Shown: positions 4,613 to 46,752, numbered from the stretch's first letter. The stretch is DNA of 64,000 bases from Selaginella moellendorffii (GCF_000143415.4 NW_003314268.1:263117-327116), one strand, 5' to 3'. Notes: a model not told the origin generated them from the letters alone. Numbers and translations are program-made.

Positions 4613-6460
4613 ACGAGCAAAGTAGCTCCAAGCTTCCCAGTGTACCTGGAAGCTAGCATGTTCATGTAAGTACTTTCACACAGAAACAACACGATAAGGT
4701 TGCTCTTGAGATGAATGAGATTCGATTATGCAGTGTTGCCAAATTTGGTCAAAAAACTCTTCAAAAGAAATAACACACAGGGAAAGATCACTCTAGTGTC
4801 TTTAATTTGTTGCATTTTTTGCATCAATAGATTGTCAAAAACAATTTGTAATTTGTTTACATTTGGTCCTATCAACCACATAGTGACAGCTTTTTTTATT
4901 GTCATAGATGCTCTGTCTCACAAAAGAGCATAAAGAATAATTTCTTGGATGCCTGCTTAAATATTCTAGTGTAATGTTTGTAAATATATATATGTATATA
5001 TATGTATTGCTCGATAATACATTAATTATAATATTATAGTATATGGATAGTCCATTTGAGATTGAATCTAGTCCATCCATCCTTGTATATAAGAAAAATT
5101 CTAAGCCCCAATTAGTATACTTATTTCTCAAGCACTTATATTGGTGGGGATAAGGGGCATTGCAATTTGTCCCTGAAGAGGTAATGCTTTGCTTTAGTGT
5201 TTAAGATTGTGTTTTTTATTCATATTTCTTCATTTTCTTTTAAATCTAGATTTGTATTATCTTTTTGCAAAATCTAGAATTCTAGTTATTGTTATACTTA
5301 GATTTACTCTTCTTTTGATATTCATTGCATTTGCATTCTTCTACTATGTCATGTTGTCATTGATCAAGGAGTATGTTACTTAAGGTTGTTAATACTATTC
5401 TATTAGATCAAACTTTTGGTGCTGTGGGGTGTGATGATATTAGTGTTACACCTATCTTTGGTGTGTTACTGTTTTCAACTTTCATAGGACTTGATTATAC
5501 AACTTATTTTATTCTCAATGTTTTACCATCTTTCATTGATATGGAGCATGATTGTGACATCGATTAGCAAGGTATGGATAATGCAGTCTGATTCTTAAAG
5601 AATATTCAAGATCAAGTTTATGGGAAGATAATGTGTATGAGCTTGAGTGGATTTCAAAGTGTGATAATGAACTTGATTATTATGGAGATAACTTAAAGAT
5701 CAAATGGAGATTTTACAGGGTAGATGTAAATCCTTCAATTTACTATTTGTTCTTTTTTCTTTATTTTTTACTCTTTCCCAACCTTTTCTTATTTCTCAGT
5801 CTAAACCACTTTCTTATGTTCTTAGTGTTCCTTCTTTGTTTGTAATATTTCATTCTCCTGACACATTAATCATTTCTGACTCTTATGATTCTCATTTTCA
5901 ATCCAATGTTGAGTTAAGTGTTTTTATATCATTCTAATACTAATCTAGATGTTGAGTATATGCATAAAGTTAAGAATTTTATTTTTTTTTCGTTAGTAAA
6001 GTCTTTGATTAGTTTTAGTGTTGAGTATTCCTTTATTCCAAGGGTTCAGTCACTTTAGCTATAATTTCAAGTTGAGTGCATATCTCTACTTATGAATGCC
6101 ACTGAAAGCCTTTGTTTTATCATTGTTGCCAAGGAATTTATATTTCTCTTGAGTGTGGATGTTATTATGATTTTCCCATCTTAAGTGTTGAATTGTGTGT
6201 TGAGGAAGTTGAGCAGTGTGAATCTTTTATTTATATTATGGTGGCCGAAGTATTTTATAATAGAAAGTCTTTTATTTTCCAAGTTTTGAGCACATATCCT
6301 TCTTTTGATTTTCCCATTTCTGCATTGTCAGCTATTGCAAATTCCTCTTCTGATATTTCTTTATCCACTTTTATTTCTTTCACAATTTTTTTCCTCAATT
6401 TTTTTCATTTTCTCCTTTTTGCTTCGACATTTCAACCTTTTTTTTCTTTGAAGGAGGGGG

Positions 6461-7609
6461 TGTAAGGAACCAACTCGCCGAGGTGTCGTAGGCTAAGGGA
6501 ACCCCGAAAGCATGACCAAAATGACAAAGAGTTCATCGGATGGGACCAAGTCAAAGATCGAGTCCAAGACCGACTCTAGGACCGAGTTCGAGATAGAGTC
6601 CGGAATCGAGTCCAAGACCGACTCGGGAACCGAGTTCGAGTCCGAGTTCGAGACCGAGTTCGAGACGGAGTCCGAGATCCGAAATCGGGTCCGAGACCGA
6701 GTCCGAAGTCGAGTCCGAGGTCGGGCCCGAGATCGGGTCCGAGATCGAGTCCGCGATCGAGTCCGAGACCGAATCCGAAATCGGATCCGAAATCGGATCC
6801 GAGATCGAGCCAGAGACTAAGTCCAAATACTAATACGGGTCAAGGGGTGAAAGCCCAAAGCGTGCGTCCCCCAGGGGGGGGGGGGCTGCAGGGGGTTCCA
6901 AAAGTATAGTAGGGATAGTGAGGTCCAGGAACCAGTTTTGAAGGGACTCTCCAGTTGGGCTTCCAAACCAACTTGAGGTTGGGACTGGGACTAAGGGGCC
7001 TTGGGTGGGAGTGAGCATGGACTTGGCTGGTGCCGGAGGGGCCATCCAAGGAAGTGCTCAAGAGCAGCTCCCACTCCCGAAAGGGAAACCGATTGCGGTG
7101 CTCCCGGCTCATGTGGAGTGGTGCCCCACTTGAGTACCATGCGGCTCATTGGTCCTCGCCCTGCCTAGGGGCTTGGGCCTTCCTTCGGGATGGAAGTGGG
7201 GGGCGAGAGGTACCCATACCGGGCCGTTAGGCCACGGTGTTTCGCCCCGGCGTCCCGAAGCAAGTGTTGCACTCAAGACTTGGGATTTAGAGGGTCCCAT
7301 GATCAAGTCTTGTGGTACCAAGGGATGTTAGGAACCTGGAAGCTTGGTGTGCTTGGCTGCTTGTGCTTGCGGGGAGTGTAGCCGAACCTTAAGTCCAGTC
7401 TAACCCGGGGAGGGGGATTGAGAGTGATTTGGGAATCCGTGGAAGGATGGCTAACACTCCATTGCTCGTGCAGTGAGTAGCTGAAACCAAGTAGGAGCTG
7501 GTACCATAGGCGAGAACCTTGGCAAGGGAACTTAGCAAAAGCCAAGGCAGTGTTGGACGGATAGACGAGGTAAGCTGGCAAATTGGAAAGGAAAAATTTG
7601 TGGCTTACA
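6461..7609 (+). repeat. 5' LTR
   Basis: TGTAAG..CTTACA; about 17 substitutions by eye (all transitions) versus 12847-13995; contains a CpG-rich hexamer array and a poly-G run. Confidence 0.96.
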
Positions 7610-7612
7610 ATT

Positions 7613-7624
7613 TGGTATCGGAGC
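7613..7624 (+). promoter_or_regulatory. Primer-binding site (initiator tRNA-Met type)
   Basis: TGGTATCGGAGC 3 nt after the LTR end; one base from the usual plant TGGTATCAGAGC. Confidence 0.9.
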
Positions 7625-7668
7625 CTTTATCTCAGTTCTAGCGAAGGATAGAGGCGGATTGCTGGGAG

Positions 7669-10600
7669 ATGGCAAGGGCAGGGCGTAAGCGAACCCAGGT
7701 GGAGACGGAACCTCCGCCGGAGCTGGAGCCTCCGGTTGAACAAGAGGCTATGGATGAGGAATCCCTGCAGGAGGAGGACTCCAGTGAGGAAACTTCCAAG
7801 CAGGAGTCCGGTGGCGAGGTTCGGTCGTCCAAGGCTCGATTGGACGTGCTAGAAGGACAGTTGGCACAGACCAATGCCCTGCTGGAGACTCTCGTACGCA
7901 AGTTAAAGCGTGACGAGAAGCGGAAGAAAAAGCGAAAGACTGCGGATGCTGGTAGCGCAGAAGGTGCGGACCCTTCGGCAGGGACTGAGGCAAAACCAGA
8001 CAAGGTCGAACAGACCGAAGTGGAATCAGTCCCTCAGGCAGTTCCCAAGTACAAACCAAAGCCCCCACCGGTGTTCAAGGGAGTGAACGACTATAAGGTT
8101 GTGGAGGATTGGTTTTACGATATGGAGGACTACTTCCGAGCGTTGCGGTTACCGAGCTCGGAGAAGGTCCCATGTGCAAAACCATACTTGGCAGATAATG
8201 CCAAGTCTTGGTGGAGAACAACGGAGGCCAACGAAGGACCGGTGGCCACCTGGGACATGATGAAGGCGAGGATCCGCGCGACATACGTTCCTCCAAATGC
8301 CACTCTGCATCTGAGAGATGAGTTGAGTAGGCTGAAGCAAACTGGAACCATCCAGGAATATGTGAATGGGTTCATGGCAAAGAGGATACTTGTCACGGAC
8401 ATGGGGGATATGGATGCGTTCCATGCCTTTATATCAGGTTTGCAAACCTGGGCTCGCGGTGAGGTGATGCGCTGGAACCCGACCAACTACAAGGAAGCGT
8501 TGGATGCGGCCATCAAGGTGCATTTCAACGATAACCTGCGAAAGGGGAACACGACGGGGTCGGGATCCACGTTTCACAAAGGGGCCAAACCGAGGGGAAC
8601 ATATAGCAAGGGGAAATTCAAGAAGAGTTTCTCTAAGAATGAGTCCTCGGGGTTCCGGAAAGGCAAAGCCGGTGGCCAGCGAGCGAGTACGTGGGGGAGT
8701 CAAGCGAAAAAAGACAAACCCATGGATAAGAAGGTCAAGTCGTATAGCAGCGTGGGCAACAACGTATGCTACAACTGCGGCGAAGCGGGACACTTCTCGA
8801 GGGAATGTCCCTACCCGAAGAAGGCCAGAGCCAATATGGCCATCAAGTCGGGTGAAGTCCAAACTGAGGTATGTGATCCAGTCCCTAACTCAAAGTTACT
8901 CATTACACGAGCAACTTTGGTAGAGAGTCGTTCGCGACATCTACTAGCCCTCCGAGGGAAGCTCGGAGGTAGCTTTGTTAAGATCCTTATTGACACGGGT
9001 GCTTCGGATAATTTTGTGGCTGCAGACATAGTCCGGCAAGCCGGACTAACGGTGCAGCGGCTAGGCGAACCAAGGACTATAGAGTTTGTTCAGGGTAGCC
9101 AAAGCACCGATGAGATACTTCGACAAGCGAGAGTCGAAGTGGGGACATGGAAAGTGGACATGGATTTCACCGTCTTGGACATGGCGGGATTTGACGTGAT
9201 CTTCGGAATGGATTGGTTTAATCGGTTCGTGGTAGCCCTGCATGGACAAGGTAGGAATCTTGTGGTATTGGCGAATGCCCAAGGAAGAAGATCTAGGGTG
9301 GAGGCCCAGGATCTAAAGGTAGGGCAAAGCAAGGCCAAAGAGTCATGCTTAAACCTGGTGTCCACGAGAGGACAACTCACTAAAGGAACTAAGGCAGCCT
9401 TTTTGTGCTTACTCTCGGTGAAGAGTGACAAAAAGACAAGAACGGAAGAAGTACCTTTAGTGATCCAGCAGGTGCTGGACCAATTCCAGGATACCATGCC
9501 AGAGGAGCTACCGGCAGGGTTGCCCCCCGCACGACTGATAGAACATAAGATTGAGCTGGTCGAGGGTGCTGAGGCGGTGGTTCGTCCACCCTATCGATTG
9601 AACGAAAAAGCACTCAAGGAGCTCAAGAGCCAACTAGAGGAGTTGGTGGACAAAGGGTATGTTAGGTTGAGCAAGTCGCCGTATGGGGCGCCGGTGCTAT
9701 TTGTGAAAAAGAAAGATGGATCTATGCGCATGTGCATAGACTACCGGTTGCTCAACAAGTATACCAAGAAGAACAAGTACCCTTTGCCAAGGATTGAGGA
9801 CCTGTTCGATAGGTTGGGAAAGGCAAAATACTTCTCGAGGATTGACCTAAGGTCAGGATACTACCAGATCAGGGTAGCTGAGGAAGATGTCGAGAAGACA
9901 ACCTGTCGAACGAGGTATGGGAGCTTTGAGTTTTTGGTGATGCCCTTTGGGCTGTGCAATGCGCCGGCAACGTTTTCGGCGTTGATGAACCACATCTTTG
10001 TACCCTATCTGGATCGCTTCGTGGTCGTCTATATTGACGACATCCTGATCTATAGCGAGACGCTAGAGGAGCATGCCGAACACTTGGCGAAGGTGTTTGA
10101 GAAACTAAGGGAACACAAACTGTATGCTAAAGAGAGCAAATGTGACTTTGCTCAACAAGAGGTAAAGTTTCTCGGGCATGTGGTGGGCCAGGACGGGCTC
10201 AAGGTGGACCCGGAGAAGGTCCAAGCGATCCAGGAATGGGAACGACCATCGAATGTACATGAGTTGAGGGCGTTCCTGGGGCTATGCAACTACTATCGAA
10301 AGTTTATCAGACACTATTCGAGAGTAGCCCTGCCCTTAACGGACCAAACAAGAAAAGGGAAGATGGTATGGACAGCGGAATGCGAGGCGGCATTCGTCCA
10401 CCTCAAAGGGAAGTTGAGGAAGGCTCCGGTGTTGGCATTACCAGACTTTGGTAAGGACTTTGAGGTAGACACGGATGCTTCGGACTTTGCGTTGGGCGCA
10501 GTTTTGAAGCAAGACAACCATCCAGTAGCGTTCTTCTTGAAGAAGCTGGACAAGGCTCAACGGAAGTGGCCTGCCCACGAGAAGGAATTGTTTGCGGTGG

Positions 10601-12441
10601 TCAAGGCGCTCAAGGAGTGGCGACACTACCTTGGGAGACACTTCAAGGTTTACACGGACAATGTGGCAACGAAACACTTCTTGTCACAGCCCGACCTAAG
10701 GGGAAAACAAGGTCGGTGGGCCAATGCTTTGGCCGAGTTTGATTGCGAGATCCTGTACAAGCCTGGGAAGAGCAACATCGTGGCAGATGCGCTAAGTCGA
10801 AAAGCGAGCTTGAAATTGGCGATATCTAGCGCGACAGCAACCTTTTGGGACGATGTGCGGACCGCATACGAGAGTGATGGTCTAGCACAAGAAGTGTTGC
10901 TGAGGAATCTGGAGGCGCGGGAAGCTCACCAGAGAGGTGAGCTGCCAACGGAAGAGAAAACGGGCTATGCGGAACGCAACGGACTCATATATTACAAGCA
11001 AACGAGGGTGTATGTTCCAGAAGGGGAACTAAGGAAGGTAGCCTTGGAAGAGTGTCATGACGGACCTCTCGCGGGACACGGCGGAGTGCCCAAGACGATG
11101 GGCTTACTCAAAAGGAAGTATCACTGGCCAGATATGGCTAAGGACGTCCAAGACTATGTAAAGACATGTCCAACATGTCAGCAGGTGAAAGCCGTGACGA
11201 AGGCTAGTGGGGGCTTGTTGCAAAGCATCCCCATTCCAGATCGTCCGTGGAAATGTCTCACGATGGACTTCATCACGGGACTACCCCCAAGCGAGGGGTT
11301 CGATGCGATATTCGTGGTGGTGGACCGATTTTCAAAGATGGCACATTTCATACCCACCACAACGGATGTGGATGCGGAAGGTGTGGCGAAGCTGTTCTTC
11401 GAACAAGTGGTTCGAGTGCGGGGAAGGCCGGAAGAGATTATCTCAGATCGAGATAAGATCTTCACCAGTAGGTTCTGGAGGACACTCCTAGAACAGTATC
11501 GCACCAAGTTGAAATTCAGCACGGCCTATCACCCACAGACAGGTAATGGATATTGAGTCAAGATTGATGGCACTAACACTTCTTGACAGACGGACAAACG
11601 GAAAGGGTGAATAGGCAGCTGGAGGATTATTTGCGATGCTATGTCTCGGGAGACCAGACCGACTGGGTAAGTCATTTGGGACTTGCGGAAATGTGTTATA
11701 ACAACTCACCACATTCGAGCATCGGGGTGAGTCCATGGGAAGTCATCAATGGGCGAGCTATTGAAGGTCCTGTGGAACTCGGCGTGGCCGAGTATCATGG
11801 AGAGTTACCCGCAGTGGAGGCATTCACGGCGGAAAGACTCAACATTTGGAATCTAGTGAGGGATTCCTTGGAACGGGCTCAACAAAGGCAAACTAAGTAC
11901 GCGAACCAAAAGCGTCGAAATGTGGAGTTCCAAGCTGGGGAGAAGGTGTGGCTGAACACCAAGAACCTCAGGCTACCAAGTGGGATCAGCCGGAAGTTGA
12001 CCCAAAGGTAAAAATGCATGTATTCCTGTAAATGAATTGATCTTGAGTTCCTTAAGCAGGTTCGCGGGGCCTTACGAGATTGAGGCTCGAATCGGTAAAG
12101 TGGCTTACCGTCTCCGACTTCCTCGAGAGATGGGGAAGATGCATCCCGTGTTCCACGTGAACTTACTCAAGCCGTATTTTGAGGATCCGCTTCGCAAGGA
12201 CCAAGTAAGACCTTTACCTGAGGTTATCCAAAGGGAGGAGGAATACGAAGTCGAGGCCATCCTCAATGCGCGCAAGAGCAAGCGACAAGGACGCGAGGTG
12301 AGAGAGTTCCATGTGAAGTGGAAAGGATTTCCACACTGCGAAGCAACATGGGAACCGGAGGAGAACCTAGCGAACGTGCGAGATCTAGTGGAGGAATTTC
12401 TGCATGGCAGAACTCTATGTACTTATGCAAAGTTCAATTAA
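7669..12441 (+). CDS. Gag-Pol polyprotein, join(7669..11542,11590..12007,12060..12441), 1557 aa
   Basis: Zn knuckle [14 protein letters not shown]; protease LIDTGAS; RT YIDD; RNase [13 protein letters not shown]; integrase HHCC, MDF..SDRD..GQTER; GPY motif; chromodomain [22 protein letters not shown]. Splicing joins three ORFs into one 4674-nt frame. Confidence 0.92.
11543..11589 (+). other. Spliceosomal intron (47 nt, phase 1) in the integrase core
   Basis: CAG|GTAATG..CACTAAC..TCTTGACAG|AC; removal restores YHPQTDGQTER; in-frame TGA at 11554-11556 if retained. Confidence 0.9.
12008..12059 (+). other. Spliceosomal intron (52 nt, phase 2) in the integrase GPY/F region
   Basis: AAG|GTAAAA..CTTAAGCAG|G; removal restores [12 protein letters not shown]. 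Confidence 0.88.
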
Positions 12442-12846
12442 AAGTATCAATTTGAGAAGTTGAGCAATGGCATATGTTGGGACCCGAAGGCGCGCCGAAG
12501 GTAAGCTAATTAGCATGGGTTAGCTAGGTCGACCAGGCGTAAGGAGCTACGCCCGACTCCCTGCGGGGATGTCGAAACCGTAGACGTATTCTATGGAGGT
12601 TGGGTTCAAGTCCCAACCTCCGTAAAGCAAGGCTGGGTTCAAGTCCCGACCCCATACTAGGGCGTGGTGAGGGGAGGAGTATAGGGACGCCTATATTCCG
12701 TTGTCATGAGCTCTTGGCCGGGGAGGCTAACTTAGGCACACCGCTAAGTGGGGGGATGCCCCCGGAGACATGGTCAACAAGTCGTAGGATAAAAAAAAAA
12801 GAGACGTTCGATGTGGGCATCGAACTTCTTCTATGGGTGGTTGAGT

Positions 12847-13995
12847 TGTAAGGAACCAACTCGCCGAGGTGTCGTAGGCTAAGGGAACCCCGAAAGCATG
12901 ACCAAAATGACAAAGAGTTCATCGGATGGGACCAAGTCAAAGATCGAGTCCAAGACCGACTCTAGGACCGAGTTCGAGATAGAGTCCGGAATCGAGTCCA
13001 AGACCGACTCGGGGACCGAGTTCGAGTCCGAGTTCGAGACCGAGTTCGAGACGGAGTCCGAGATCCGAAATCGGGTCCGAGACCGAGTCCGAAGTCGAGT
13101 CCGAGGTCGGGCTCGAAATCGGGTCCGAGATCGAGTCCGCGATCGAGTCCGAGACCGAATCTGAAGTCGGATCCGAAATCGGATCCGAGATCGAGCCAGA
13201 GACTAAGTCCAAATACTAATACGGGTCAAGGGGTGAAAGCCCAAAGCGTGCGTCCCCCAGGGGGGGGGGGACTGCAGGGGGTTCCAAAAGTATAGTAGGG
13301 ATAGTGAGGTCCAGGAACCAGTTTTGAAGGGACTCTTCAGTTGGGCTTCCAAACCGACTTGAGGTTGGGACTAGGACTAAGGGGCCTTGGGTGGGAGTGA
13401 GCATGGACTTGGCTGGTGCCGGAGGGGCCATCCAAGGAAGTGCTCAAGAGCAACTCCCACTCCCGAAAGGGAAACCGATTGCGGTGCTCCCGGCTCATGT
13501 GGAGTGGTGCCCCACTTGAGTACCATGCGGCTCATTGGTCCTCGCCTTGCCTAGGGGCTTGGGCCTTCCTTCGGGATGGAAGTGGGGGGCGAGAGGTACC
13601 CATACCGGGCCGTTAGGCCACGGTGTTTCGCCCTGGCGTCCCGAAGCAAGTGTTGCACTCAAGACTTGGGATTTAGAGGGTCCCATGATCAAGTCTTGTG
13701 GTACCAAGAGATGTTAGGAACCTGGAAGCTTGGTGTGCTTGACTGCTTGTGCTTGCGGGGAGTGTAGCCGAACCTTAAGTCCAGTCTAACCCGGGGAGGG
13801 GGATTGAGAGTGATTTGGGAATCCGTGGAAGGATGGCTAACACTCCGTTGCTCGTGCAGTGAGTAGCTGAAACCAAGTAGGAGCTGGTACCATAGGCGAG
13901 AACCTTGGCGAGGGAACTTAGCAAAAGCCAAGGCAGTGTTGGACGGATAGACGAGGTAAACTGGCAAATTGGAAAGGAAAAATTTGTGGCTTACA
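12847..13995 (+). repeat. 3' LTR
   Basis: Near-identical to 6461-7609 and of the same length. Confidence 0.96.
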
Positions 13996-15823
13996 GGGGG
14001 TAGAGGGGATGGATGGGAGTTCAGCCCTGATAATAGAGTGAGGATAAATGAATACAATATTGAAGCGAGGACAAATGATATGGATTGTAGAGTGAGGATG
14101 AGCATAGTGAGTTTGAACAAAATATCTAGCCTAATGTGAAACCCAACAAATGCAATAATGGAGTGAGGCCAAATATAGATGGTAGAGTGAGTAGAAGTAT
14201 AACAAGTCTAAATAAAGTTGGTGCTTCCAAATGTTTTTTCCTTTGAAGGGATAAGGAGGATATGAAGGATAAATGGAGTGAGTTCAATTTTTCATATGCA
14301 ATGCTAAACAAAGATGAAGAGACAAGTTCTACATGTAGTTGTAAGTTTGAGTTAACAACAGTCTCAAAGAATTATCAACGAGTAAACTTAAATATGGGAT
14401 ATATTATTTATTGCAATGGAATTTCATGGATTACAATGGTTCTTGAAGTTCTTTGCTTTGGTTCAAAGTTATGGTTTAAGATTAGTTTAAGCATTTGGCA
14501 TTTATACACAAAAGTATAATTGGTTCATTAGGATTTTATAAATGACTAATACTTATACCTTAGCTTTGGGTTTTGTTTCAATCATGGTTGTTAGCAATTT
14601 TATTGGTGGTTTTATGGGAGTTTTAGATTCTTGTGATAATTTATAATTGTCCAATAGAAGCTCCAGATGTTCCACCTGACTTATTGCCATCAACTTTTTT
14701 ATCTTTTGGAGGGGAGGATAGTGTAAGGTTTATAAATATATATATGTATATCTATGTATTACCCTTAATTATAATACTATAGCATATGAACCATTCATTT
14801 AGGATTAAATCTGGTCCATTCATTCTTGTAGAAGTCTAAACCCCAATTAATATGCCTATTCCTATATCTTGGGAAAGAGCTTTACAAACTCACAATTAGA
14901 ATTTAGTATTTATTTATGTTGACCCCAATGCTTTCTTTTTGCACTGCCTAGTTGTTCTAGCTAAGTGTGGGAGGGTTGAAATGCAATCACTATTTACTAG
15001 TTAGGAAAAATCTGACTATGTTTTAACTAGGATCTAGTACTTAAAATATTTATATTTTAGCATTTACTTTTTACCAGAGCTATCAAAAGTATGATTGGAC
15101 ATAGTCATATGTATATATATGAGTAGGATATATATAAAAAACAATTCTACCTAGCATGATTATAATTATAATTGCATGCAAAAGTAGATGCCCACAAACA
15201 AAAGTTTCCACACACATATTAAAACAATTCTAACTTGAGTGTCTCAAACATATTTAAATATTCATGTGAATAATTTTATTAATTAGATTTTAAACACTTG
15301 CTTAATTAGTAATTAGAAGTGGGCTGGAAGAAGCCCATTGTTTGCTGTGTCTTCACTGCATTGCCACCACCTAAGAAAGACAAATAAAGTGCACCTAAAT
15401 ATTGAGCAAGACATGTGTTGCAATTTAACTTTTATCTGCAATAGTAGCCTGTTGATTTTAAGATGCCACACTAGATTGTTTTGATGTGTAGACACGTTTA
15501 ATGTTTTGAAACTAGGAACATTTGAAAGGAATAACCTAATGCTAAAGAAGTCCTATCAACCTCCTATAGCTGAGGTAGATGAGAAAGAGTTTTTTTCTTT
15601 GTAACTTTACACTATCAAAGAGACATATGGCTCTAAAACATTTGGGAGGAATCTCTCAAACATAACTTTGGACTTCAATTTGCAATAAAGAAGCTTCATA
15701 AATTTGGAAAATACAAGTAAGATTTTTATAATTTTCTAATTGATCTCTCATGCTTTACTTAAATAGGTTGAGAAAGTTCATTATTCAAGACTCATAGAAG
15801 AAGTGTGCATCCCTAATGAAGAA

Positions 15824-16251
15824 GTAAATATTTTATCTTGTATATCTTCTTAAGTAGAGTAAAAGAAAGAAGCTTAAGCAAAATTGAGTTATGCCTAATC
15901 TTAGGCATCCAAAAAAGAAAGATTCAACATAAGCAACACTCATTATGGACAAGTATAAAACAATTAAAAACAGTTATAAAATTATGTAATATATAAGTAG
16001 CACTTAGATATATTGAAAAACAAGCCCCACTCATTATTGTATGCATTTATGTTGAATTAACATTTTTTTTTCTTGCCTATATATGTTTGTGCTAAATAGA
16101 GTTGAGAGAATGACATATGTTTATCCTTACTGACACCTTTGGGATTTGAAACTAAGTTATCTTTTATTCTCTTTTTATTCTACTCTTCTTATTCTCTTCT
16201 TTTTCTCTCCTTCTATGTTCTTGTCTCTATTTTTTTATTATTGTTTTATAG
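15824..16251 (+). repeat. ~400-bp intron-like repeat, copy 1 (copy 2 at 22445-22830)
   Basis: Both copies start GTAAAT, end in a pyrimidine tract plus AG, and share blocks such as CCCCACTCATTATTGTA and AATAGAGTTGAGAG. Confidence 0.65.
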
Positions 16252-16256
16252 GTAGG

Positions 16257-19200
16257 TGTAAGACACAACAAAAAATGTAGATGCTTTTTAGAGAATAAGG
16301 TGTGACTAAACCAGTGCATGAGTTCCACAAGATGGTGTTATTCCCTGGCATGGTGTCAAAGAGTCGCTAAGCTATGCCACCAAGGCATATGCTGTGGCAA
16401 TGGTGTTCCAGGAGAGATTGTTACACAGCGGCATCGAATCAAAAGTAGGAGTGGAACTCTAAATGAAGTGTTCAAGAGATGAGCACGAAGCAATCGGTGA
16501 ATGAGTCTTTAAAAAAGGACACAAGAAAGACTGACATATGGCAAATGTTATGACATATAGAAGTGTTAGGAACGAGTTCAAAAAAGAGTCCAAAATGGAG
16601 TTCGAAAAGGAGTTCAACATGAAGTCTAAAATAGAGCCTGATATAGACCCAAGATGGACCCGAGATGGACCCGAGATGGAGTCCAAGATGGAGTCCGAGG
16701 TGGGTCCGAGATAGAGTGTGAAGTCGAGTCTGAGATAGAGTCCGAGGTCAAGTCCAAGATGGACCCAAGATGGAGTCCGAGATGGACCCGAGATGGAGTT
16801 CGAGATGGAGTTTGAGATGGACTTGAGATGGTGAAACGAACAAGAGAGTGAACCCTCAACCCTTAATGCGTTATGACCTTAAATCCCACAGGCCATAGAA
16901 TATTCTTGGAATATTCCTATAGTTCGTGCCTCGCTCATGACCCAGCCATATATGGCAGCCTCGAGAAGCTAAACGAGCCTCACATGAAGGGAGTCCAAGG
17001 TAATACGGCCATGGAGAAAAGATGTGCAAACGGCAACACCAACATCGTGACAAATGGTCACGAAAGAAAGAAAGTAATATGGCTTTCTCATATGACAATA
17101 CAGTCATGGAAAACAAGAGAATGAGAATAGAACAAATGGCTCAAATCATATAGCAATACGGCTATAGAACTCAATTCTCCCCTTCCTTAAGAATGTCATC
17201 CAAGTCATAACCAAAACTCGGAAATCTTCACGTTATCTTCAGTTTCCCATGTAGCTTAGTCCATGGAATAACCATTCCACTGAACTAACAACTCCTTAGT
17301 TGTTTTCCAGCGTGTTTTCACCAATCTTTAAGCAAGAATATTGGCCAGACCAGCCTTCTCTGCATCAATCTTTGGAACCTAGATGATGGACTGATCCACG
17401 ATATCACTAGAGTGCAAACACGCTTTAAGCTTACTTACATGGAACGTTGGATGAATCTTCGAACTAACTAGCAAGTCCAAAGTGTATGCAAGATCCCCCA
17501 CACGCTGTAAAATTGTCCAAGGCCCACAATACCGTGGAGACAACTTAACACTGCCACCTCCTTTTAGAGACCGTTGTGCATCCGATAGCTTAAGGAAAAC
17601 CTTGTCACCAACTTTGTACTCTTGGTGACGATGATGCTCATCAGCCAATTTTTTGTCTCGCTCTTGAGCTTGCCTCATGTTCAATTTTGCCAACTCAAGC
17701 TTGTCTTGCATATCCTCTAGGAAATCATAAGCATGAGGAACCCGAACAAAAGCCAAATTCAAACTCACAAGAGATCTAGGCTCATAGCCATACATTGCCA
17801 TAAAAGGAGACATGCCAATAGCCGATTGATGAGTGCTATTGTGAGCAAATTGAAGCAAGGCAAATACTTCTCCCATACTCCCTGTTGAGTCAAATTTCCC
17901 ACAAAAGACCTTAGCATATCTTCTAATAGCTGATTCATGCACTCTGTCTGCCCATCAGATTGTGGATGCTCACCATTACTCATGCTCAGCTTAGTCTCTA
18001 GCTTCTCAAAGACCGTTTGCCAAAACTTGGATGTGAACTTGGGATCCTGATCACTCACAATGTCACTCGGCAAACCATAGAGATTGAATAACCGATCTAC
18101 AAACAACTAAGCAAGTTCAGAAGCTTTTATTGTTGTCTTCACAAGGAAGAAGTGAGCCATCTTCGTCAAACGATCCACAACAACCCAAATGGCATCATTT
18201 CCTCGAAAAGTTTTGGGCAAACCAGTGATAAAGTTTATCGAGATGCTATCCCACTTATTCTTGGGTACATGTAAAGGATGATATAGACCAGCAAGCTTCT
18301 AATGATCAACTTTGACCGCCTAGCAGGTCAAACAACCACGTGCGTACTTCTCAACATCTAACTTCATCCCAGGCCAAAAGAAATGCCTCTTCATCAACAT
18401 ATATGTTCTCAATACCCTTGGATGCCCAGCATTTGGCATATCATGACACTCAACCAAAATCCGTTTGATGAGTTTGTCAACATGAGGAACCACTAAACGT
18501 CCCTTCTTTACCAGGATTCCATCTCGTATTTCAAATGACGCAAACTTGTCACCCTTCAAATCCGTAGAGGCGTCCCTCAACAAAACCTTCACACGAATAT
18601 CAGTGATAAAGGAGTTGAAGTCAGCAAACTCCTTAAGCTCATCCAAGAGATCACTGGATAGCTTCACGAACGAGATAAAATTTACCATCTTGGATAGCAT
18701 CAACCACTTTATTGTTACCTCCATGCTTGTATCAAATCTTAATAGACATTTCCTACAGGAACTCTTGCCAACGAGCAAGGCAGCCTCAAAGATTCTTTTG
18801 TCGACTAAAATATTGGAGAGACTAATGGCCTGAATCCACATGGAAGTCCGATCCATATAGATAATATTGCCATTCTCGAGTAGGTCAATTCCGCTACGTG
18901 GAATCAAACTTGTGGCTCATGAATGCAAGAGAATGCCTAATTTGAAGCAATACGGCCCCAAAAGCACTATCACTCACATCATTGCCTATAATTTCCACCA
19001 TATTCACTTTATCATTCATTGACCCCTTCAGAACAATCCTTGCTCTGATGTCTAGCTCTATGGCAACGAAAACAATTGCTCTCTGCTTTGTCTTTCTTTC
19101 GCTGGTCCAAACGAAGTTTTTTAGCCTCACTCCCATCTTCATGCTTTGAGCCACAATGGAATAACGGCTGTTTCTTCCCCGAATATGAAGAATCAACAAG

Positions 19201-21209
19201 CTGGTCATCATGTTGACTACTCCGTAGACTATCTCGTTGACTAGAGTTGACTAAGTTGACTAGTGGTTCGGGCGAAAAGATTTGAGCTTTAGTGATAGCA
19301 TTAGTCAATGTTGCTGGAAAATCTTTCTTGACCTTCTGTTGCACATCCACTGAGCTCAAGCCTTTGATGAAACATTACACCTTTAGCAGTTCATTATAGG
19401 TACTCATGAGATTAAGGCAAAGATCACGAAACTTGCGGGCATATGCATCCAAAGACAAAGTCCCCTACCAGATCTCTAACAACTGGTTCACGAGATCAAC
19501 CTCTTCAAAATTCTTGACAAATGAAGTGTGGAAAACTTTCGTCAAATTAGTCCAAGAAGTTGGCTTTGGATTAGCTTTAATGTAGTTCTTCCACCACGAA
19601 GAAGCATGGCCCATAAGCTTCATCACAAAGAAATCTATCTTCACCTTATCTTCACAAGGATTGTGAGACTAACAACTTTCCCATAATTTCAACTAAGAAT
19701 CAACCTTTTGACTATCACAAACATCTGGTGATGATTTCCATTCCATAATGTCATAATCCTTAATGTACCAATGGTAATCATGGACATGAGATCGATTTAA
19801 CCTTTGAGGGTCCATGTGAAGCAAGAAATCTTTAATGAGATTAACAGAATCCTTAACTTCCTTTATGTCGCTCTGAACCTCAGAAATCTAGCATCTTTGC
19901 CGCACAACGACATCATCAAGAGTTTTGTCTTCATCATCATGGCCATCATCACTAACGCCATACTCCTCATCAGGTTCAATATCTTGCTCACTTGCCATCC
20001 CCAAAAGAACGTGCTGCTCCGATACCAATGTAGGCCAACCTCCCAACCCTTAAGGCGTTACGGCCTTAAATCCCAAAGGCTATAGAATATTCTCAGAATA
20101 TTCCTATAGTTTGTGTCAGATGGAGCTCAAGATGGAGTCCAAGGTCGAGTTGAGATAGAGACCGAGATCGAGATTGAGACCGAGACCGAGACCAAGTCCG
20201 AGACCGAGACCAAGTGTAAGACCGAGACCGAGTCTGAGACTAAGACCAAGTCCAAGTCCGAGGGTGAAAGCCCAAAGCAATCAACTCCCAAACCCTAGGG
20301 GCTTTGGGAGCTCTAAAAGTATAATAGGGGGAAGACTCCAATAGTACCAGTTTGGCTAGGAAAGGCCAGTGTGACTAAGGAAAACTATACTTATTTGTTA
20401 GGTGATGATATAACCATTGAGGGGTAGTTTAATGAAGTGTTCAAGAGTTAACTCTAGCTCCCCCAAGAGATCGAATGATCAATGCTCTCAATCCAAGTGT
20501 GGGTGGTACTACTTACTTGGATACTTAGTGTGGCTTAACGGAACCTTGCTCTAGCCCCATGGCTAGGGCACCCAAAAGCAAAAGGTGGGAAGATTATTCA
20601 TGAAGCTTGAGTAGGGCTATGGTGTTCTAAAATGTTATCCTAAAATCCTAAATTGTGAAAAAGAAAAAGAATAATTCTTTAGTGTAGTGATTAAAAATAT
20701 GGTCATATGGTGAAGAAGTTCCAAAGGACAGTGGGACTTAATGGTTAGGCTTGGGGGCCTTGACCCAGTAATAGTGTTGGCAAACATAGCTATGGACAAA
20801 AAGGGACTTGGTGGGGACCAAAAAAGGGATATTGGGGAAGACTATTCCCTATGTTTATGGGCATTTTAAGGATGCTAAGGAATGGATCTAGAATGATCAC
20901 TCATGGATAGATAGCTAAGTCTTTGAGAGATGGGATTGTGATGTAAGTGGTGTTGAATCACCGGTATAACAAAGGTGAATGGGCATGGCCTTAGCATAAT
21001 AAATTGATATGTTGGTAGTACATTTGGGTGTCGGTCATGGGATCGGACATGTGGAGCACTTAGACCAAGTGCAAAGGTTGAGTGGCATGAATGCCATTCT
21101 CGAGGCTAACACTGAAATAAGATTTATGGAGGTTCTGAGTAAGACTCCTCTAAGTGGTTGGATGTGTGGTTAAATGACTAAAGTAGAATAAAAATTTTAA
21201 TCTCTTACA
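16257..21209 (+). mobile_element. Solo LTR (same family as 59218-60707) interrupted by a nested element
   Basis: TGTAAGACAC..TCTCTTACA; imperfect TSD GTAGG/GCAGG; hexamer arrays on both sides of the insertion; 20.3-21.2 kb aligns to the reverse complement of 59.2-60.2 kb. Confidence 0.8.
16849..20118 (-). mobile_element. Degenerate Ty3/gypsy chromovirus lacking protease and RT
   Basis: PBS TGGTATCGGAGC at 20016-20027; gag and knuckle CFRCHRARHQSKDC run straight into RNase H (DVSDSAFGAVL), then integrase (HPQSDGQTE, KLSPRYCGPW), a chromodomain remnant and a PPT at ~17174-17188. LTR copies at ~16849-17173 and truncated at 20029-20118; many stops. Confidence 0.85.
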
Positions 21210-22444
21210 GCAGGGGCAAAAATGCAAGTATAAGCAAATGAAACCTTACTCATTTTTTATAACCACGGTGGGATAAGTTGTCACTTTTTGGCTTGAAAAA
21301 CAACTGGGAGAAAATCACTTGTGAATTCCAAATATGCCCAACACTAAGAATCACAAGTAGATGTCCTTAGTGATTCCAAAGGCCCTGACCCTAAACAACA
21401 TTAAATGAAAGAGCTCTTTTTGTGATTGTAGTGGCTTAATGCCCAAACAATGCAAGAAAGATAGTTCTCAACCGTCACTAAAGCCACAGAGCATGGGATA
21501 AGTTTGAGATTGAAGTACGGCATATATTGTCAAGAAACTCAAGTTTAAATTGTTTTGCTAGCAATTTCTTGAGAAAAATCCAAAAAAAGAATGAATGGAG
21601 TTTGTTTGATGTGGAAAACACCATCAACTATTTAAGAATTTTTTCCTTTTGAGCAAGTTCTCATTTGGGCTTTTAGAAGACACATTTTTTAGTAGTGTGT
21701 CACAATTTTTTTAGGCATACACAAGTAGAAAAATTGGGCACTTGTAACTCTTGTCTTTGACTCTAATTTAAAGAGAGTTAAAACCAACTTTAGTAAAGAA
21801 CAAATTAGGGAATTATTCACCTAAATCTTATGAGGATTTGACAAAGGCAAAATCATAATTAGAACATTGTATTATCTCAAGGCTTTAATCCAAAGTCCTT
21901 TAGCTTGGACAACTACTCAAATACGGTTTAAAAGTAGATTTGTCCCGAGTTTAAGTTTCCTATGCATATTGCAAAAGCCTATGAGACTCGAATAAGACTC
22001 ACAAGTCGAAAATTCAAAAGTTTTATAAAGGAGCTCACTCAACATATCGAAGGAGGCAATCAATTAGTTGACGAGTTGATACAACCAATAAAAGATAAGG
22101 AAACTACGAAGTATCACATGCAAGTCTTGAGCTACCTAAAGACAATCACCAAGAAAGTGGATGGAGTCATAGGTGAGTAGAATCATTAGCACCACATAAT
22201 TGAAGAGCTCAAGAGCGCAATCCCAACTTCTATATCCACCAATATAGAGCACATTAGCTGTCAAGACCAACACATCACTATACATGATCAAAAGAATCAG
22301 AACATACGTTAAGAACTTGATAATCTACACCAAAGTGTTGAGCTTGTCACTATGAAAACCAAGCTCAACAAATTGAAGCAGGATTTAAAGAATCTGATTG
22401 CATAAAGACAAGCAATAGCTTTGTCATGTGGGAGTGATGAAAAA

Positions 22445-22830
22445 GTAAATGTTTTATCTTATATATTTCCCAAGTAGAGCAGTTTAGGCAAAATGAAGTT
22501 ATGCTTAAACTTAGAATAAAAGACTCGACTTAAGAAATACTTGTCATAAATAAACCTGAAATTGTTAAGAATGATTATAAAATCATATAGTATATAAATA
22601 ACACTTACATGTGTTGAAAAACAACCCCCACTCATTATTGTATACATTTGCATTAAATTAGCCATTTTTTCTCCCACTTATGACTGTTTGTGCAAAATAG
22701 AGTTGAGAGTGATATATATCTATCCTTACTCATGCTTTTGGGGTTTGAGGTTGAGTTCTCTTCTATTCTTTTTTTATTTTTCTTTTCTTTTTTATGTTTT
22801 TGTCTCTATTTTTTTATCACTATTTTGCAG
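22445..22830 (+). repeat. ~400-bp intron-like repeat, copy 2
   Basis: Homologous to 15824-16251; followed by GTAGGGGCAA, the empty site of the solo-LTR insertion. Confidence 0.65.
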
Positions 22831-37465: not shown

Positions 37466-37539
37466 TGGCCCATGCAGGTCTCGAACCTGCGACCTTCGCG
37501 TTATTAGCACGACGCTCTGACCAACTGAGCTAATAGGCC
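37466..37539 (-). tRNA. tRNA-Ile(AAT)
   Basis: GGCCTATTAGCTCAGTTGGTCAGAGCGTCGTGCT-AAT-AACGCGAAGGTCGCAGGTTCGAGACCTGCATGGGCCA folds as a cloverleaf. Confidence 0.95.
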
Positions 37540-37637
37540 TCACATGACAACATTGTCAAGTTTCAGCTTACAATGCATCGCAGATAGCTAATTTATGGTT
37601 TGTAGAAATATTAGTAATAATGTTTATAACAACTAAA

Positions 37638-37709
37638 GGATCCGTGGCGCAATGATAGCGCATCTGACTCCAGATCAGAAGGCTGCGTGTTCGAATCACG
37701 CCGGATCCA
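37638..37709 (+). tRNA. tRNA-Trp(CCA)
   Basis: GGATCCG..TCTGACT-CCA-GATCAGA..GTTCGAATC..CGGATCCA with a downstream T-run; D-loop reads GA instead of GG. Confidence 0.9.
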
Positions 37710-38555
37710 AAGAGAATTTCTTTTTGTCTTCCTCCATTCGTTCTATAGAACCTCATTTTTTCTCTCGTATGGATCATCGCACCAACAAACATCTGATCCA
37801 CGAGCGCGATGCTCATGGCAATCCCAATCGTAGCTTAGCAGCAGCAGCAGCCCATCACGCAGTAGCGCCCACAGCATTTGCGCGCCATCCGAGCAGCACA
37901 CGAGCATTCTTTCCGCGATCGCGGGTGAGCTCCCAGACCTCCAAGAACAAGCCACTCCCCCCAACCAAAGCCACTCGATTCCCACACTGGAGTAGCTCTT
38001 TGGGCTCGAAAGTCCAGGTGAGAGTCGAGGTGAAACGAGAACAAAGCCACGAATCGTCTCACATGGACTCCATGGAGTAAGCGATCACCCTCCTGCCGGC
38101 CAAATCCAGCGCGTACCGCACAAGGTGCTTGCCACCACCTTCGTCAAGCACACTACCGTCCTCGAGCTTGAGATACCGCTTCACCTCCCACGAATCCAAT
38201 CGATCGTCGGACATGCTCTCGATCCTCGCCAGCTTGAATACGTGCTCTGTAGCGACGACAACCGTGAAGACTTCCAGGATCCCGACCCCTCTGAAAGGGG
38301 AGAGGTTCCTGGGAGGATCTTCGTCGGCCGAGGCAGCAGCGCACACAAATGTGTGATCTGGAGCATCCACAAGCCCAGCGAGTTATTGAAGATCGCCAGC
38401 CTCGAGAGGGCTCTTGCTCGGGCTCGTGCTCGGGCTGGGGTCGGGAGGAACGCCACCCAGTGATCAATGGCGGGCTTGCAGGTGGCGGAGCACGTAGAGG
38501 GCTTCCATGGAGTCGTTGCTCAGCTAGAACCCTAACTAATAGAGGATTAGGGCTC

Positions 38556-39475
38556 CTACTGGAAGAAGACCCAGAGCAAATCTGGGAGGGTTTGCTTGGG
38601 GCGGATGAAAATCTTCAAGCTCTTCTCTAGCATCCCCGCGGCGGCGTCCAGCCCCTTGGCGCTCAGCTTGGCGCACAGCGACACATCCAGATACTCGAGG
38701 CGCGAGCAGCCGCGGGCAATGTGGAGCAATCCCTCGTCCGAGAGCTCGCCCCTCTTCATCTCCAGGTGCTTGATCCCGCGCAGGGATCGCGATAGCACCA
38801 GCGCCTCGTCGTCGTCCCCTCTGGCCAGGAGCTTGTTCCGCTCGATCCGGTCGCTGTTCCTCAGCATGTTTCGCTTGAGCCGGATCAGGCGCGGGCAGTG
38901 CCGCCCCAGGGCTTCCAATCCGGCGCTGGAGATATTGTAGCAGTCGCTGATGTCGATCGATGCCAGGAGCGGGCATTTGTACGCGAGCGTCATCGCCGAG
39001 GAATCGGTCACGCGGAGGCTGTTCCGGATCCCCAAGCTCACGAGCTTCGGGCACCTGTTGGATCGATCATCGAAAATTTTTCCAGTGTTCTTCCAAGGGA
39101 CGAGAGATCATACCTGTGAGCGATGTATTCCAGGGAGGAATCGCAGCAATGCATGGTGCGCAGGTCTTGGAGCATCCCGCGGCTCCGATCGACGACCTCG
39201 TGGATGATCCACTTGATCTGATCGTCACACTCGAACTCCCACCAGAAATCCTGCTGCACGCGCGCCAGGAACCACGGCTCTATGTCCACGCTCGTCCAGC
39301 AATGCGGCTCCTCCTTGCATGCCCTGTTCCATCTCTTGCAAACCAGTGGCGCGCTCAAGAATCTCTCCTCAAACGGCAGCCTCGCAAGGATCTGCGCCAG
39401 AAGATCGGGAAGTAGCTGCTCCCAGCAGGAGAAAGATTGCTCATCTTCCAGGCCATTTCCCTCCTCGTCGGTCAT
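38556..39475 (-). CDS. F-box/LRR protein (SKIP1/FBW2-like), 2 exons
   Basis: F-box WEQLLPDLLAQILARLP..VCKRW; Cys-type LRRs (CPLLASIDISDCYNIS, CSRLEYLDVSLC). Confidence 0.88.
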
Positions 39476-39548
39476 GATCTTGATCAAGAAACGACGCCAC
39501 TGCTATCTAGCCCGAGATTGGGAAGGGCATTGTGATTGAAATCTGCCG

Positions 39549-42764: not shown

Positions 42765-43151
42765 TCGATTCGAGAGAAAGAAATAGGGAAGAACCCTAGA
42801 AAATATTTTGGAGTCCACTCCACGGACTTGAGAGCCGGATTCCAATTCGGCCGTGAGTCCGTACGCACTGGGTGTAAAGTCCATTCCATCCATCCACAGT
42901 CCCGTTTCGTCGTGGTCGGCCTCTCCAATATGCGATAATTTCTAGGGATTTTAGCCCCATTTCTTGGTTCCAAGAGTTCTAAACCCTCGCCCTGCCCAGC
43001 GGGGATCGTCGCGGCGCCGGATCTGGTGAGCTCCCCGATCGATACTCCTCTCCCACCTCCGTAATCTCGCTTCTCGAATCTCATTCTCTCCTCCGCCAGG
43101 TGAAAATCTTCCATTCCCACGCGCGGTGCCTCCGATCTGGATGCGCCAGTG

Positions 43152-44765: not shown

Positions 44766-45084
44766 AAAGTGGCGATCTACCTTTAATTCCGGGTGGTGGG
44801 TAAATTTCTTTCTTTTTTACCTTTTCATACCGGGCGGGGCAGCAGTGGAAAACAAATTTTTATGGGTATGATCTACTACGTCGAAAGGTTTCTACGTGAT
44901 TTTTTTCTTGCTTGCGAAGGTTTCTACGTAGTGTTTTTTTTCTTCTTCTCTTACGTGGGAGAGGTACTTAAGCATTTGCTTGCTTGGGGATTGGATCTTT
45001 TAATTTTTTCTTTCTTTGTGCCTTGGTTTGTTCTCTTGTTTATAATCCTCATCTCTTTATATGAGCGGTCTAGGGAGATCGGCT

Positions 45085-46723: not shown

Positions 46724-46752
46724 GAATCTCCATCAAAACTATCAACTGGGCG

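What the first reader, a model, noticed from the sequence alone, without database searches (positions are those of the whole stretch)
11543..12059. LTR retrotransposon whose integrase is split by two spliceosomal introns
Seen: the pol frame breaks twice, each time at a short AT-rich GT..AG insert (11543-11589, 47 nt, with CACTAAC branch point; 12008-12059, 52 nt). Precise removal restores YHPQT-D-GQTER and KLTQ-R-FAGPY and gives one 1557-aa frame. The element is otherwise intact and young (1149-bp LTRs differing at ~17 sites, perfect TSD). The other chromovirus in this window (17.4-18.1 kb) has both motifs uninterrupted. Established: reverse transcription of spliced RNA purges introns, and the Glu in GQTER is the third DD(35)E residue. 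Inference: unspliced RNA stops at TGA 11554, giving an integrase without catalytic Glu, GPY/F or chromodomain, so integration would depend on splicing while only intron-retaining RNA is copied.
Basis: partly seen in the sequence, partly recalled or inferred. Interest (0 to 1): 0.95.

Follow-up and report, generated by a model that had tools for sequence, protein, structure and literature searches.

The report
Retrotransposon that needs splicing for integrase
A young, abundant LTR retrotransposon of the spikemoss Selaginella moellendorffii carries two small true introns inside its integrase gene and a third in its leader that cuts out the reverse-transcription primer site. Only spliced RNA can encode a working integrase, while only unspliced RNA appears able to be copied back into DNA.

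Summary
The element at 6461-13995 is an intact Ty3/gypsy chromovirus: 1149-bp LTRs 98.5% identical, 5-bp target duplication, one gag-pol frame of 1557 codons. That frame is broken only by two AT-rich GT..AG inserts, 11543-11589 (47 nt) and 12008-12059 (52 nt).

Public RNA data show both inserts removed exactly, together, in one 1083-nt transcript contig. One raw RNA-seq read from a second study shows the 47-nt splice. A third intron, 7570-7635 in the leader, is also spliced; it removes the last 40 nt of U5 and the primer binding site. A DNA run of the same species, with very deep coverage of this family, shows none of the three joined forms.

Of 35 listed differences between the expressed copy and this copy, 29 are synonymous in the splice-defined frames, so the spliced protein is under selection. 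The host is Selaginella moellendorffii.

Best reading: spliced RNA is a non-replicable mRNA for full Gag-Pol, and unspliced RNA is the replicable genome, which is how the introns persist. Linkage of the three splices on single molecules is not shown.

First readers of this scan noted the same pattern in many other windows of this genome; those notes are unchecked. I found no published description. The closest precedent is the Ogre intron.

The parts
6456..6460 (+). Target-site duplication, left copy (GGGGG)
   Evidence: GGGGG lies directly before the 5' LTR and again at 13996-14000.
6461..7609 (+). 5' LTR (1149 bp, TG..CA)
   Evidence: 98.52% identical to 12847-13995, with 17 mismatches (all transitions) and no gaps.
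7570..7635 (+). Leader intron (66 nt, GAG|GTAAGC ... TCTCAG|T). It removes the last 40 nt of U5, the PBS and 10 more bases.
   Evidence: X15 contig record 9 (1341 nt) joins 7567->7634 (cut +2, GT..AG). X1 DNA shows no such joint. Sequence.
7613..7625 (+). Primer binding site (TGGTATCGGAGCC), 3 nt after the LTR end
   Evidence: Searches give the sequence. The likeness to the 3' end of plant initiator tRNA-Met is from memory and was not tested here.
7669..11542 (+). Exon 1 of gag-pol: Gag, CCHC knuckle, protease, RT, RNase H, integrase zinc finger, and the integrase core up to both catalytic Asp
   Evidence: translation; Pfam: Retrotrans_gag, zf-CCHC, RVP_2, RVT_1, RT_RNaseH, Integrase_H2C2, rve.
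11543..11589 (+). Integrase intron A (47 nt, phase 1, CAG|GTAATG ... TGACAG|A). If retained, translation stops at TGA 11554-11556.
   Evidence: joint 11537->11585 (cut +5) in X15 contig record 13 and in one X23 raw RNA read (41 nt on the shorter side). The joint is absent from X1 DNA.
11590..12007 (+). Exon 2: rest of the integrase core, including the catalytic Glu (GQTER)
   Evidence: 4 of 6 listed differences from the expressed copy are synonymous in this frame, against 2 and 0 in the other two frames.
12008..12059 (+). Integrase intron B (52 nt, phase 2, AAG|GTAAAA ... AAGCAG|G). If retained, translation stops at TAA 12009-12011.
   Evidence: joint 12005->12058 (cut +2) in the same X15 contig record 13. 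X1 DNA record 7 (11998-12086) carries the intron with both borders.
12060..12441 (+). Exon 3: GPY/F SH3-like domain and chromodomain, then the stop codon
   Evidence: SH3_Tf2-1 2.5e-15, Chromo 2.6e-16; 6 of 7 listed differences are synonymous in this frame.
12847..13995 (+). 3' LTR
13996..14000 (+). Target-site duplication, right copy (GGGGG)
17229..18562 (-). Comparator: integrase region of a second, decayed chromovirus of another family, with no insert at either position

Best explanation
This is a member of an abundant chromovirus family of Selaginella moellendorffii that carries three genuine U2-type spliceosomal introns: one in the leader and two inside the integrase coding sequence.

The full-length transcript can take two routes. 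Spliced RNA has one continuous 1557-codon gag-pol frame. It is the only RNA that can encode an integrase with the complete DD(35)E triad, the GPY/F domain and the chromodomain. Because the leader intron takes out the 3' end of U5 and the primer binding site, this mRNA cannot prime minus-strand synthesis or give a cDNA with a proper LTR end. Unspliced RNA keeps U5 and the PBS and is therefore the replicable genome. On its own it can only encode Gag-PR-RT-RNase H plus an integrase stump that ends four residues before the catalytic Glu. Integrase must therefore come in trans from spliced mRNA, and new copies always inherit all three introns.

Shown: the introns are in the DNA. All three are removed exactly in RNA, and the two integrase introns are removed together on one contig. 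No joined form was seen in the one DNA run laid. The spliced frames are under purifying selection.

Inferred: leader splicing goes together with integrase splicing on the same molecules; unspliced RNA is exported and packaged; and lack of the PBS is what keeps spliced RNA out of the replication cycle.
For: One search gives most of the RNA and DNA evidence.
- X15 contig record 13 (1083 nt, depth 9.4) covers 11217-11537 | 11585-12005 | 12058-12398. Both introns are cut at GT..AG in one contig.
- X15 contig record 9 joins 7567->7634, again GT..AG.
- X15 bin depths over the introns fall exactly as expected if intron sequence has zero depth (6.96 and 6.70 against 9.36). X15 therefore behaves as RNA, and the spliced form dominates in it.
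- One X23 raw RNA-seq read, from another study, shows the 47-nt splice.
- X1 DNA contigs have depth 0 for all three joints, against summed depths of about 36,000-85,000 across the region, and they contain intron B with both borders.

29 of 35 listed differences between the expressed contigs and this copy are synonymous (P about 5e-9 against the transition expectation of 0.34). For exons 2 and 3 alone it is 10 of 13 (P = 0.002), and only in the splice-defined frames.

the copy has an intact ORF, LTRs 98.5% identical and a perfect TSD, so it transposed recently with its introns in place.

splice signals are canonical and the introns are AT-rich.

first-reader notes report the same 516-517-nt two-intron pattern in many other windows of this genome. 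These are leads and were not checked here.
Against: - Contigs 9 and 13 are separate, so nothing shows that the leader and integrase introns are removed from the same molecules. An RNA that kept the PBS but had lost A and B would be copyable.
- X15 is labelled RNA only by a guess of the tool. My case that it is RNA rests on its intron-free coverage and its small total size.
- Raw-read support is a single read. X24 had no reads on the stretch at all.
- Logan contigs drop rare variants, so rare intronless DNA copies are not excluded.
- No unspliced RNA was seen in X15, so the proposed genomic RNA was not observed directly.
- I could not fetch other genomic copies myself.
Confidence: 0.72

Rival explanations
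1. The introns are real and must be spliced for integrase, but their persistence has nothing to do with the leader intron. Only unspliced RNA is packaged, either because a packaging or dimerisation signal lies in intron sequence or because a distinct, unprocessed RNA pool is used, as in retroviruses, Ogre and BARE. On this view the loss of the PBS from the mRNA is incidental.
For: The facts fit this reading equally well. Ogre keeps its intron without any PBS-removing splice being described (as summarised in PMC6317226 and PMC4408406). BARE uses separate RNA pools for translation and for packaging (PMC3735527).
Against: The leader intron spans exactly the U5 end plus the PBS. That alone is enough to make the spliced RNA unusable as a template. 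No packaging signal is known for this element.
Confidence: 0.2
2. The integrase part of this family is dispensable and splicing is a by-product. Copies are mobilised by the integrase of another family, and the inserts are tolerated junk that happens to be recognised by the spliceosome.
For: Other chromovirus families with uninterrupted integrase exist in the same genome. Non-autonomous families are common.
Against: Differences between the expressed copy and this copy in exons 2 and 3 are mostly synonymous, and only in the spliced frames (10 of 13). All integrase, GPY/F and chromodomain motifs are intact. The two inserts have canonical signals and restore conserved motifs to the residue.
Confidence: 0.05
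3. The inserts are post-insertion mutations private to this copy, or the spliced contigs are assembly artefacts or DNA of intronless copies.
For: Only one raw read supports splicing. The kind of run X15 is a guess.
Against: The spliced contig is about 3% different from this copy, so it comes from another copy that has the same borders. DNA run X1 carries the intron sequence at family-level depth and shows no joined form. X15 lacks intron sequence altogether, which a DNA library of this genome could not. The three independent joints are all exact GT..AG.
Confidence: 0.02

Closest known systems
Ogre elements (Ty3/gypsy, Tat/Ogre lineage) of pea and Medicago
   Same: Both are LTR retrotransposons whose polyprotein frame is interrupted by a spliceosomal intron. 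The intron must be spliced to translate the downstream pol domains, yet genomic copies keep it (as summarised in PMC6317226, PMC4408406 and PMC12786077; the primary papers are not held in the library).
   Different: Ogre has one intron of a few hundred bp between the gag-protease and RT-RNaseH-integrase ORFs. It is spliced in only a subset of transcripts and is thought to set the Gag:Pol ratio. Here there are two 47-52-nt introns inside the integrase of a chromovirus, plus a leader intron that removes the PBS. In the one RNA data set, the spliced form is the only one assembled. The lineages are different.
Subgenomic gag RNAs of Ty1/copia elements (Drosophila copia, Arabidopsis EVADE, barley BARE)
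   Same: The spliceosome is used to make RNA species with different roles, and translation and replication are divided between RNA pools (PMC12786077, PMC3735527).
   Different: In those elements the 'intron' is the pol coding region itself, and unspliced RNA encodes the complete polyprotein. Here unspliced RNA cannot encode a complete polyprotein.
Foamy viruses (Pol from a spliced mRNA) and retroviruses in general
   Same: A pol product is made from a spliced RNA that is not the packaged genome (PMC7828637). From my own knowledge, not checked here: in spuma- and deltaretroviruses the major splice donor lies in R, upstream of the PBS, so their spliced RNAs also lack the PBS.
   Different: Retroviral splicing removes whole upstream genes to reach a downstream ORF. 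It does not repair a coding sequence interrupted by small introns.
Penelope-like and DIRS retroelements that retain introns
   Same: These are retroelements whose genomic copies keep spliceosomal introns (Arkhipova et al. 2003, cited in PMC6431247).
   Different: They belong to other classes, with different replication and priming. They have no LTR-PBS logic.

Membership tests
Ty3/gypsy chromovirus (Metaviridae, chromodomain-bearing) | Direct LTRs with TG..CA ends, flanked by a short target-site duplication | tested here: met
   1149-bp LTRs, TG..CA ends, 5-bp GGGGG duplication.
Ty3/gypsy chromovirus (Metaviridae, chromodomain-bearing) | Domain order Gag(CCHC)-PR-RT-RNaseH-IN | tested here: met
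   Pfam hits occur in this order along exon 1.
Ty3/gypsy chromovirus (Metaviridae, chromodomain-bearing) | [quoted passage not shown] | tested here: met
   SH3_Tf2-1 and Chromo in exon 3. They are reachable only after splicing.
Ty3/gypsy chromovirus (Metaviridae, chromodomain-bearing) | Assignment to a named clade (Tcn1, Reina, CRM, Tekay, Galadriel, Chlamyvir) | not tested
   The nearest proteins are only 41-54% identical in the integrase. No reference tree was built.
U2-type spliceosomal introns | GT..AG borders with donor, branch-point and acceptor signals, and AT-rich composition as in plant introns | tested here: met
   donors GAG|GTAAGC, CAG|GTAATG, AAG|GTAAAA; branch-like CTTAC, CTAAC, TTGAT; GC 0.33-0.39 against 0.52.
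U2-type spliceosomal introns | Exact removal in RNA | tested here: met
   three exact joints in X15 contigs and one raw read in X23.
U2-type spliceosomal introns | The joined form is absent from genomic DNA | tested here: met
   X1 DNA contigs have depth 0 at all three joints. Contigs can miss rare variants.
Ogre-type intron-containing LTR retrotransposons | Tat/Ogre lineage, with the intron between the gag-protease and RT ORFs | tested here: not met
   gag to the integrase core is one ORF. The introns lie in the integrase and the leader. The element is a chromovirus.
Ogre-type intron-containing LTR retrotransposons | Splicing needed to translate downstream pol domains, with the intron kept in genomic copies | tested here: met

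The most novel reading that the evidence does not exclude
This retrotransposon family has a self-enforcing division of labour written in introns. The fully spliced RNA is a translation-only messenger: it has a complete integrase frame but no PBS and no U5 end. The unspliced RNA is a replication-only genome: it has the PBS but an integrase cut before the catalytic Glu. Integration therefore depends on the host spliceosome, and the introns can never be purged by reverse transcription. The introns may also have been kept because splicing helps a plant transcript to be exported and expressed and to avoid RNA silencing.
Probability: 0.4. Interest if true: 0.88.

Novelty: new variant of a known kind. 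Interest (0 to 1): 0.8.

Why it matters
Textbook logic says retroelements lose introns, because they pass through spliced RNA. Engineered introns are even used as reporters of retrotransposition for this reason. Ogre was the main LTR-element exception.

Here an abundant, recently active chromovirus keeps three introns. Two of them sit in the catalytic enzyme that the element needs for insertion, and the third offers a simple structural reason why spliced RNA is a dead end for replication.

If the model holds, it gives a clean natural system for several questions:
- how LTR elements separate mRNA from genomic RNA;
- how intron-bearing RNA leaves the nucleus in plants;
- whether introns help transposons escape RNA silencing.

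It also matters for annotation. ORF-based tools will call such copies defective, and the family's proteins are missing from the large protein collections searched here.

Tried and rejected
- **Protein searches for close relatives.** The aim was to test intron positions in other copies or species. The integrase-region search gave only relatives 48-54% identical, all with uninterrupted integrase. Exon 2 alone gave no hit in the word-indexed search. In the exhaustive search it gave only clusters 41-50% identical.
- **Hits starting about 10 residues before GQTER.** Several hits start there. I first wondered whether this marked the same intron. It is better explained by a Met that I recall is often conserved at that place in gypsy integrases, so I rejected it as evidence.
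- **Exact-product look-ups.** The 1295-aa ORF, an exon-3 sub-ORF and a neighbouring PPR gene were not on record.
- **The search of earlier findings.** The search by sequence was blank, which means nothing according to the operators. No note mentions intronless copies.
- **Rfam.** Nothing was found on 6000-14200.
- **Leader fold.** In the fold of 7540-7680 the donor pairs with the LTR end, but z = -1.58 is not significant.
- **RNA run X24.** No reads on the stretch, so it is no test.
- **Candidate 'exitron' at 8869-8947 (note s1-420526).** No joint was seen, but X15 has almost no coverage there, so it remains untested.
- **Literature.** Six searches and several papers turned up no description of introns in a chromovirus integrase or of a PBS-removing leader intron in an LTR retrotransposon. 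Subscription papers are not covered.
- **Sequences.** I built no joined or consensus sequence of the element.

Full report
**What is in the sequence**

The window holds a complete LTR retrotransposon at 6461-13995. Its LTRs (6461-7609 and 12847-13995) are 1149 bp long and align without gaps, with 17 mismatches (98.52% identity). They end in TG..CA and are flanked by GGGGG on both sides.

An ORF starts at ATG 7669, 60 nt after the LTR, and runs for 1295 codons to TGA 11554-11556. Pfam finds Gag, a CCHC knuckle, protease, RT, RNase H, the integrase zinc finger and the integrase core, in that order. The core match ends at the last residues of the ORF.

The frame breaks at 11543-11589. This is a 47-nt insert that begins GTAATG, ends GACAG and holds CACTAAC. 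After it the frame continues with GQTER for 138 codons. It breaks again at 12008-12059, a 52-nt insert that runs from GTAAAA to AAGCAG. It then continues with FAGPY through an SH3-like GPY/F domain and a chromodomain to a stop at 12439-12441.

Counting from the translation, the Glu of GQTER is 35 residues after the first Asp of SDRD. The third residue of the DD(35)E triad therefore lies just behind the first insert.

Without the inserts the coding sequence is 4674 nt, which is 1557 codons plus stop. The inserts have GC 0.38 and 0.33 against 0.52 for the coding sequence. A second, decayed chromovirus on the minus strand at about 17.2-18.6 kb has HPQSDGQTE and KLSPRYCGPW uninterrupted.

**Host**

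The window also holds intronless PPR genes, one with an E motif, and a UDP-glycosyltransferase. The glycosyltransferase ORF is 100% identical to an NCBI protein of Selaginella moellendorffii (P0121). The host is therefore this spikemoss. From my own knowledge, it is a plant with unusually short introns; I did not check this here. Inserts of 47-66 nt are thus of the host's usual intron size.

- **Run X15.** The run holds 26 Mb of contigs in all and was guessed to be RNA by the tool. It has a 1083-nt contig (record 13, depth 9.4) lying on 11217-11537, 11585-12005 and 12058-12398. With the stated shifts of +5 and +2, the joints are 11542^11590 and 12007^12060, both GT..AG. Both introns are thus removed exactly, and together, on one assembled transcript.
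- **X15 behaves as RNA.** The X15 bin depths over the two introns (6.96 and 6.70 against 9.36 beside them) are what one gets if intron sequence has no depth at all. A DNA library of this genome could not look like that, so X15 behaves as RNA and the spliced form dominates in it.
- **Run X23.** This is a documented RNA-seq run of another study. It had only six reads on the stretch. The one read that crosses junction A is spliced, with 41 nt on the shorter side.
- **Run X24.** It had no reads and is no test.
- **Run X1 (DNA).** It covers the family at summed word depths of about 36,000-85,000. It contains intron B with both borders (record 7, 11998-12086; depth 84,739 at 12010). It shows depth 0 for each GT..AG joint; its only joints are scattered one-contig deletions of depth 3-14.

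Those outcomes were private inserts, no junction reads, or mostly intronless copies. The caveat is that contigs can hide rare variants.

**A third intron**

X15 record 9 (1341 nt) joins 7567->7634 (cut +2), which removes 7570-7635. The donor is GAG|GTAAGC and the acceptor TCTCAG|T. The LTR ends at 7609 and the PBS (TGGTATCGGAGCC) is at 7613-7625. This 66-nt intron therefore removes the last 40 nt of U5, the PBS and 10 more bases, and the acceptor lies 33 nt before the gag ATG. It is confirmed here at the RNA level and absent as a joined form from X1 DNA.

**Selection**

The expressed contigs differ from this copy by about 3%. Of the 35 differences listed that fall in coding sequence, 29 are synonymous and 28 are at third codon positions. 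Against an expectation of 0.34 for transitions, P is about 5e-9. In exons 2 and 3 alone, 10 of 13 are synonymous (P = 0.002). In the other two frames the counts are 2 and 0 of 6 for exon 2, and 2 and 0 of 7 for exon 3. Many of these variants are also common in X1 DNA, so they mark subfamilies. The protein encoded by the spliced message, including the parts behind each intron, has therefore been under purifying selection while the family diversified with its introns in place. Only the rows shown by the tool could be used (40 of 126).

**How it most likely works**

Spliced RNA is the only message for a complete Gag-Pol, and it has lost the PBS and the U5 end. By the established mechanism of LTR-element reverse transcription, it can neither prime minus-strand DNA nor yield a cDNA with a correct LTR terminus.

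Unspliced RNA keeps the PBS and U5 and is the only usable template. It therefore hands all three introns on to every new copy. On its own it encodes Gag-PR-RT-RNase H and an integrase stump (...YHPQTGNGY stop). If only B is retained, the product lacks the GPY/F and chromodomain parts (stop at 12009-12011).

Integrase would thus be supplied in trans by spliced mRNA.

Shown:
- the introns exist, are spliced exactly, and stay in the DNA;
- the spliced frames are under selection;
- the copy is young and intact.

Inferred:
- the three splices are linked on single molecules;
- unspliced RNA is exported and packaged;
- loss of the PBS is the barrier. A packaging signal inside an intron, or a separate RNA pool as in BARE (PMC3735527), would do the same job.

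**What is known**

A 2025 review states that plant LTR retrotransposons generally lack introns, and names Ogre and EVADE as the exceptions (PMC12786077).

In Ogre, one intron between the gag-protease and RT-RNaseH-integrase ORFs is spliced from a subset of transcripts to allow translation of the whole polyprotein (PMC6317226; PMC4408406). Copia, EVADE and BARE splice out pol to make a gag message. Foamy viruses make Pol from a spliced mRNA (PMC7828637). Penelope-like elements keep introns (cited in PMC6431247).

Surveys of Selaginella chromoviruses do not mention introns (PMC2864245; PMC6317226). I found no report of small introns inside a chromovirus integrase or of a leader intron that removes the PBS. 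The library does not hold most subscription papers.

The element is a chromovirus by every structural test. It works like Ogre in needing splicing for pol, but it is not an Ogre. I rate it a new variant of a known kind.

**Earlier notes of this scan**

First readers noted the same two-intron pattern, mostly as a 516-517-letter span, in many other windows of this genome, and a second family with integrase introns. In all, 328 notes hold the three words 'retrotransposon', 'intron' and 'integrase'. The listed ones are unchecked, and none reports intronless copies. I could not read those copies. The X1 DNA depths are my own evidence that the introns are family-wide.

**Limits**

- One read-laying run only.
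- One raw read for junction A and none for junction B or the leader.
- The RNA nature of X15 is argued from its coverage, not taken from a record.
- No linkage between the leader and integrase splices.
- No direct alignment of other genomic copies.
- In line with the rules for plant proviral stretches, I only observed.

Noticed in passing
window 6461-7609 vs 12847-13995: All 17 differences between the two LTRs are transitions. In the C-bearing copy, 5 are in CG, 4 in CHG and 8 in CHH context. This looks like deamination of methylated cytosines. One of them (7574 G in the 5' LTR, A at 13960 in the 3' LTR) is position +5 of the leader-intron donor.
   Followed up: partly
window 7569-7609: In the minimum-energy fold of 7540-7680, the leader donor GGUAAGC can pair with GCUUACA at the LTR end, which is the likely branch region. 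This could hide the splice site in some RNAs, but z = -1.58 is not significant.
   Followed up: partly
window 11538-11589 and 12006-12061: There are short direct repeats at the intron borders. GACAG stands before donor A and again at the end of intron A. AGGT stands at both ends of intron B. The repeats fit an origin by insertion or duplication at a proto-splice site, but they are short enough to be chance.
   Followed up: no
window 6529-6850 and 12915-13236; also 60136-60476 (-) and 62060-62227 (-): A 12-nt tandem repeat array fills part of U3 in both LTRs. A 71%-similar array and a 3'-UTR-like piece near 60-62 kb look like a remnant of a related element with no pol left.
   Followed up: partly
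window 15918-22709 (-): A second chromovirus of another family, old and decayed. It has low GC, frameshifts and stops, and LTR-like repeats only 75% identical. Its integrase has no insert at either intron position.
   Followed up: partly
window 8681-9023: X15 transcript contigs leave a gap here, with depth 0-0.85.
   Followed up: partly
window 10900-12600: Runs labelled with three other (coded) organisms hold 0.53-0.64 of the 31-mers of this stretch. Nearly identical copies may therefore occur outside the reference strain or species.
   Followed up: no
window 37466-48492: A host gene island: tRNA-Ile and tRNA-Trp back to back (37466-37709), two intronless PPR genes (39549-41270, 46753-48492; the second with an E motif) and a UDP-glycosyltransferase (43149-44765) identical to an annotated S. 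moellendorffii protein.
   Followed up: partly
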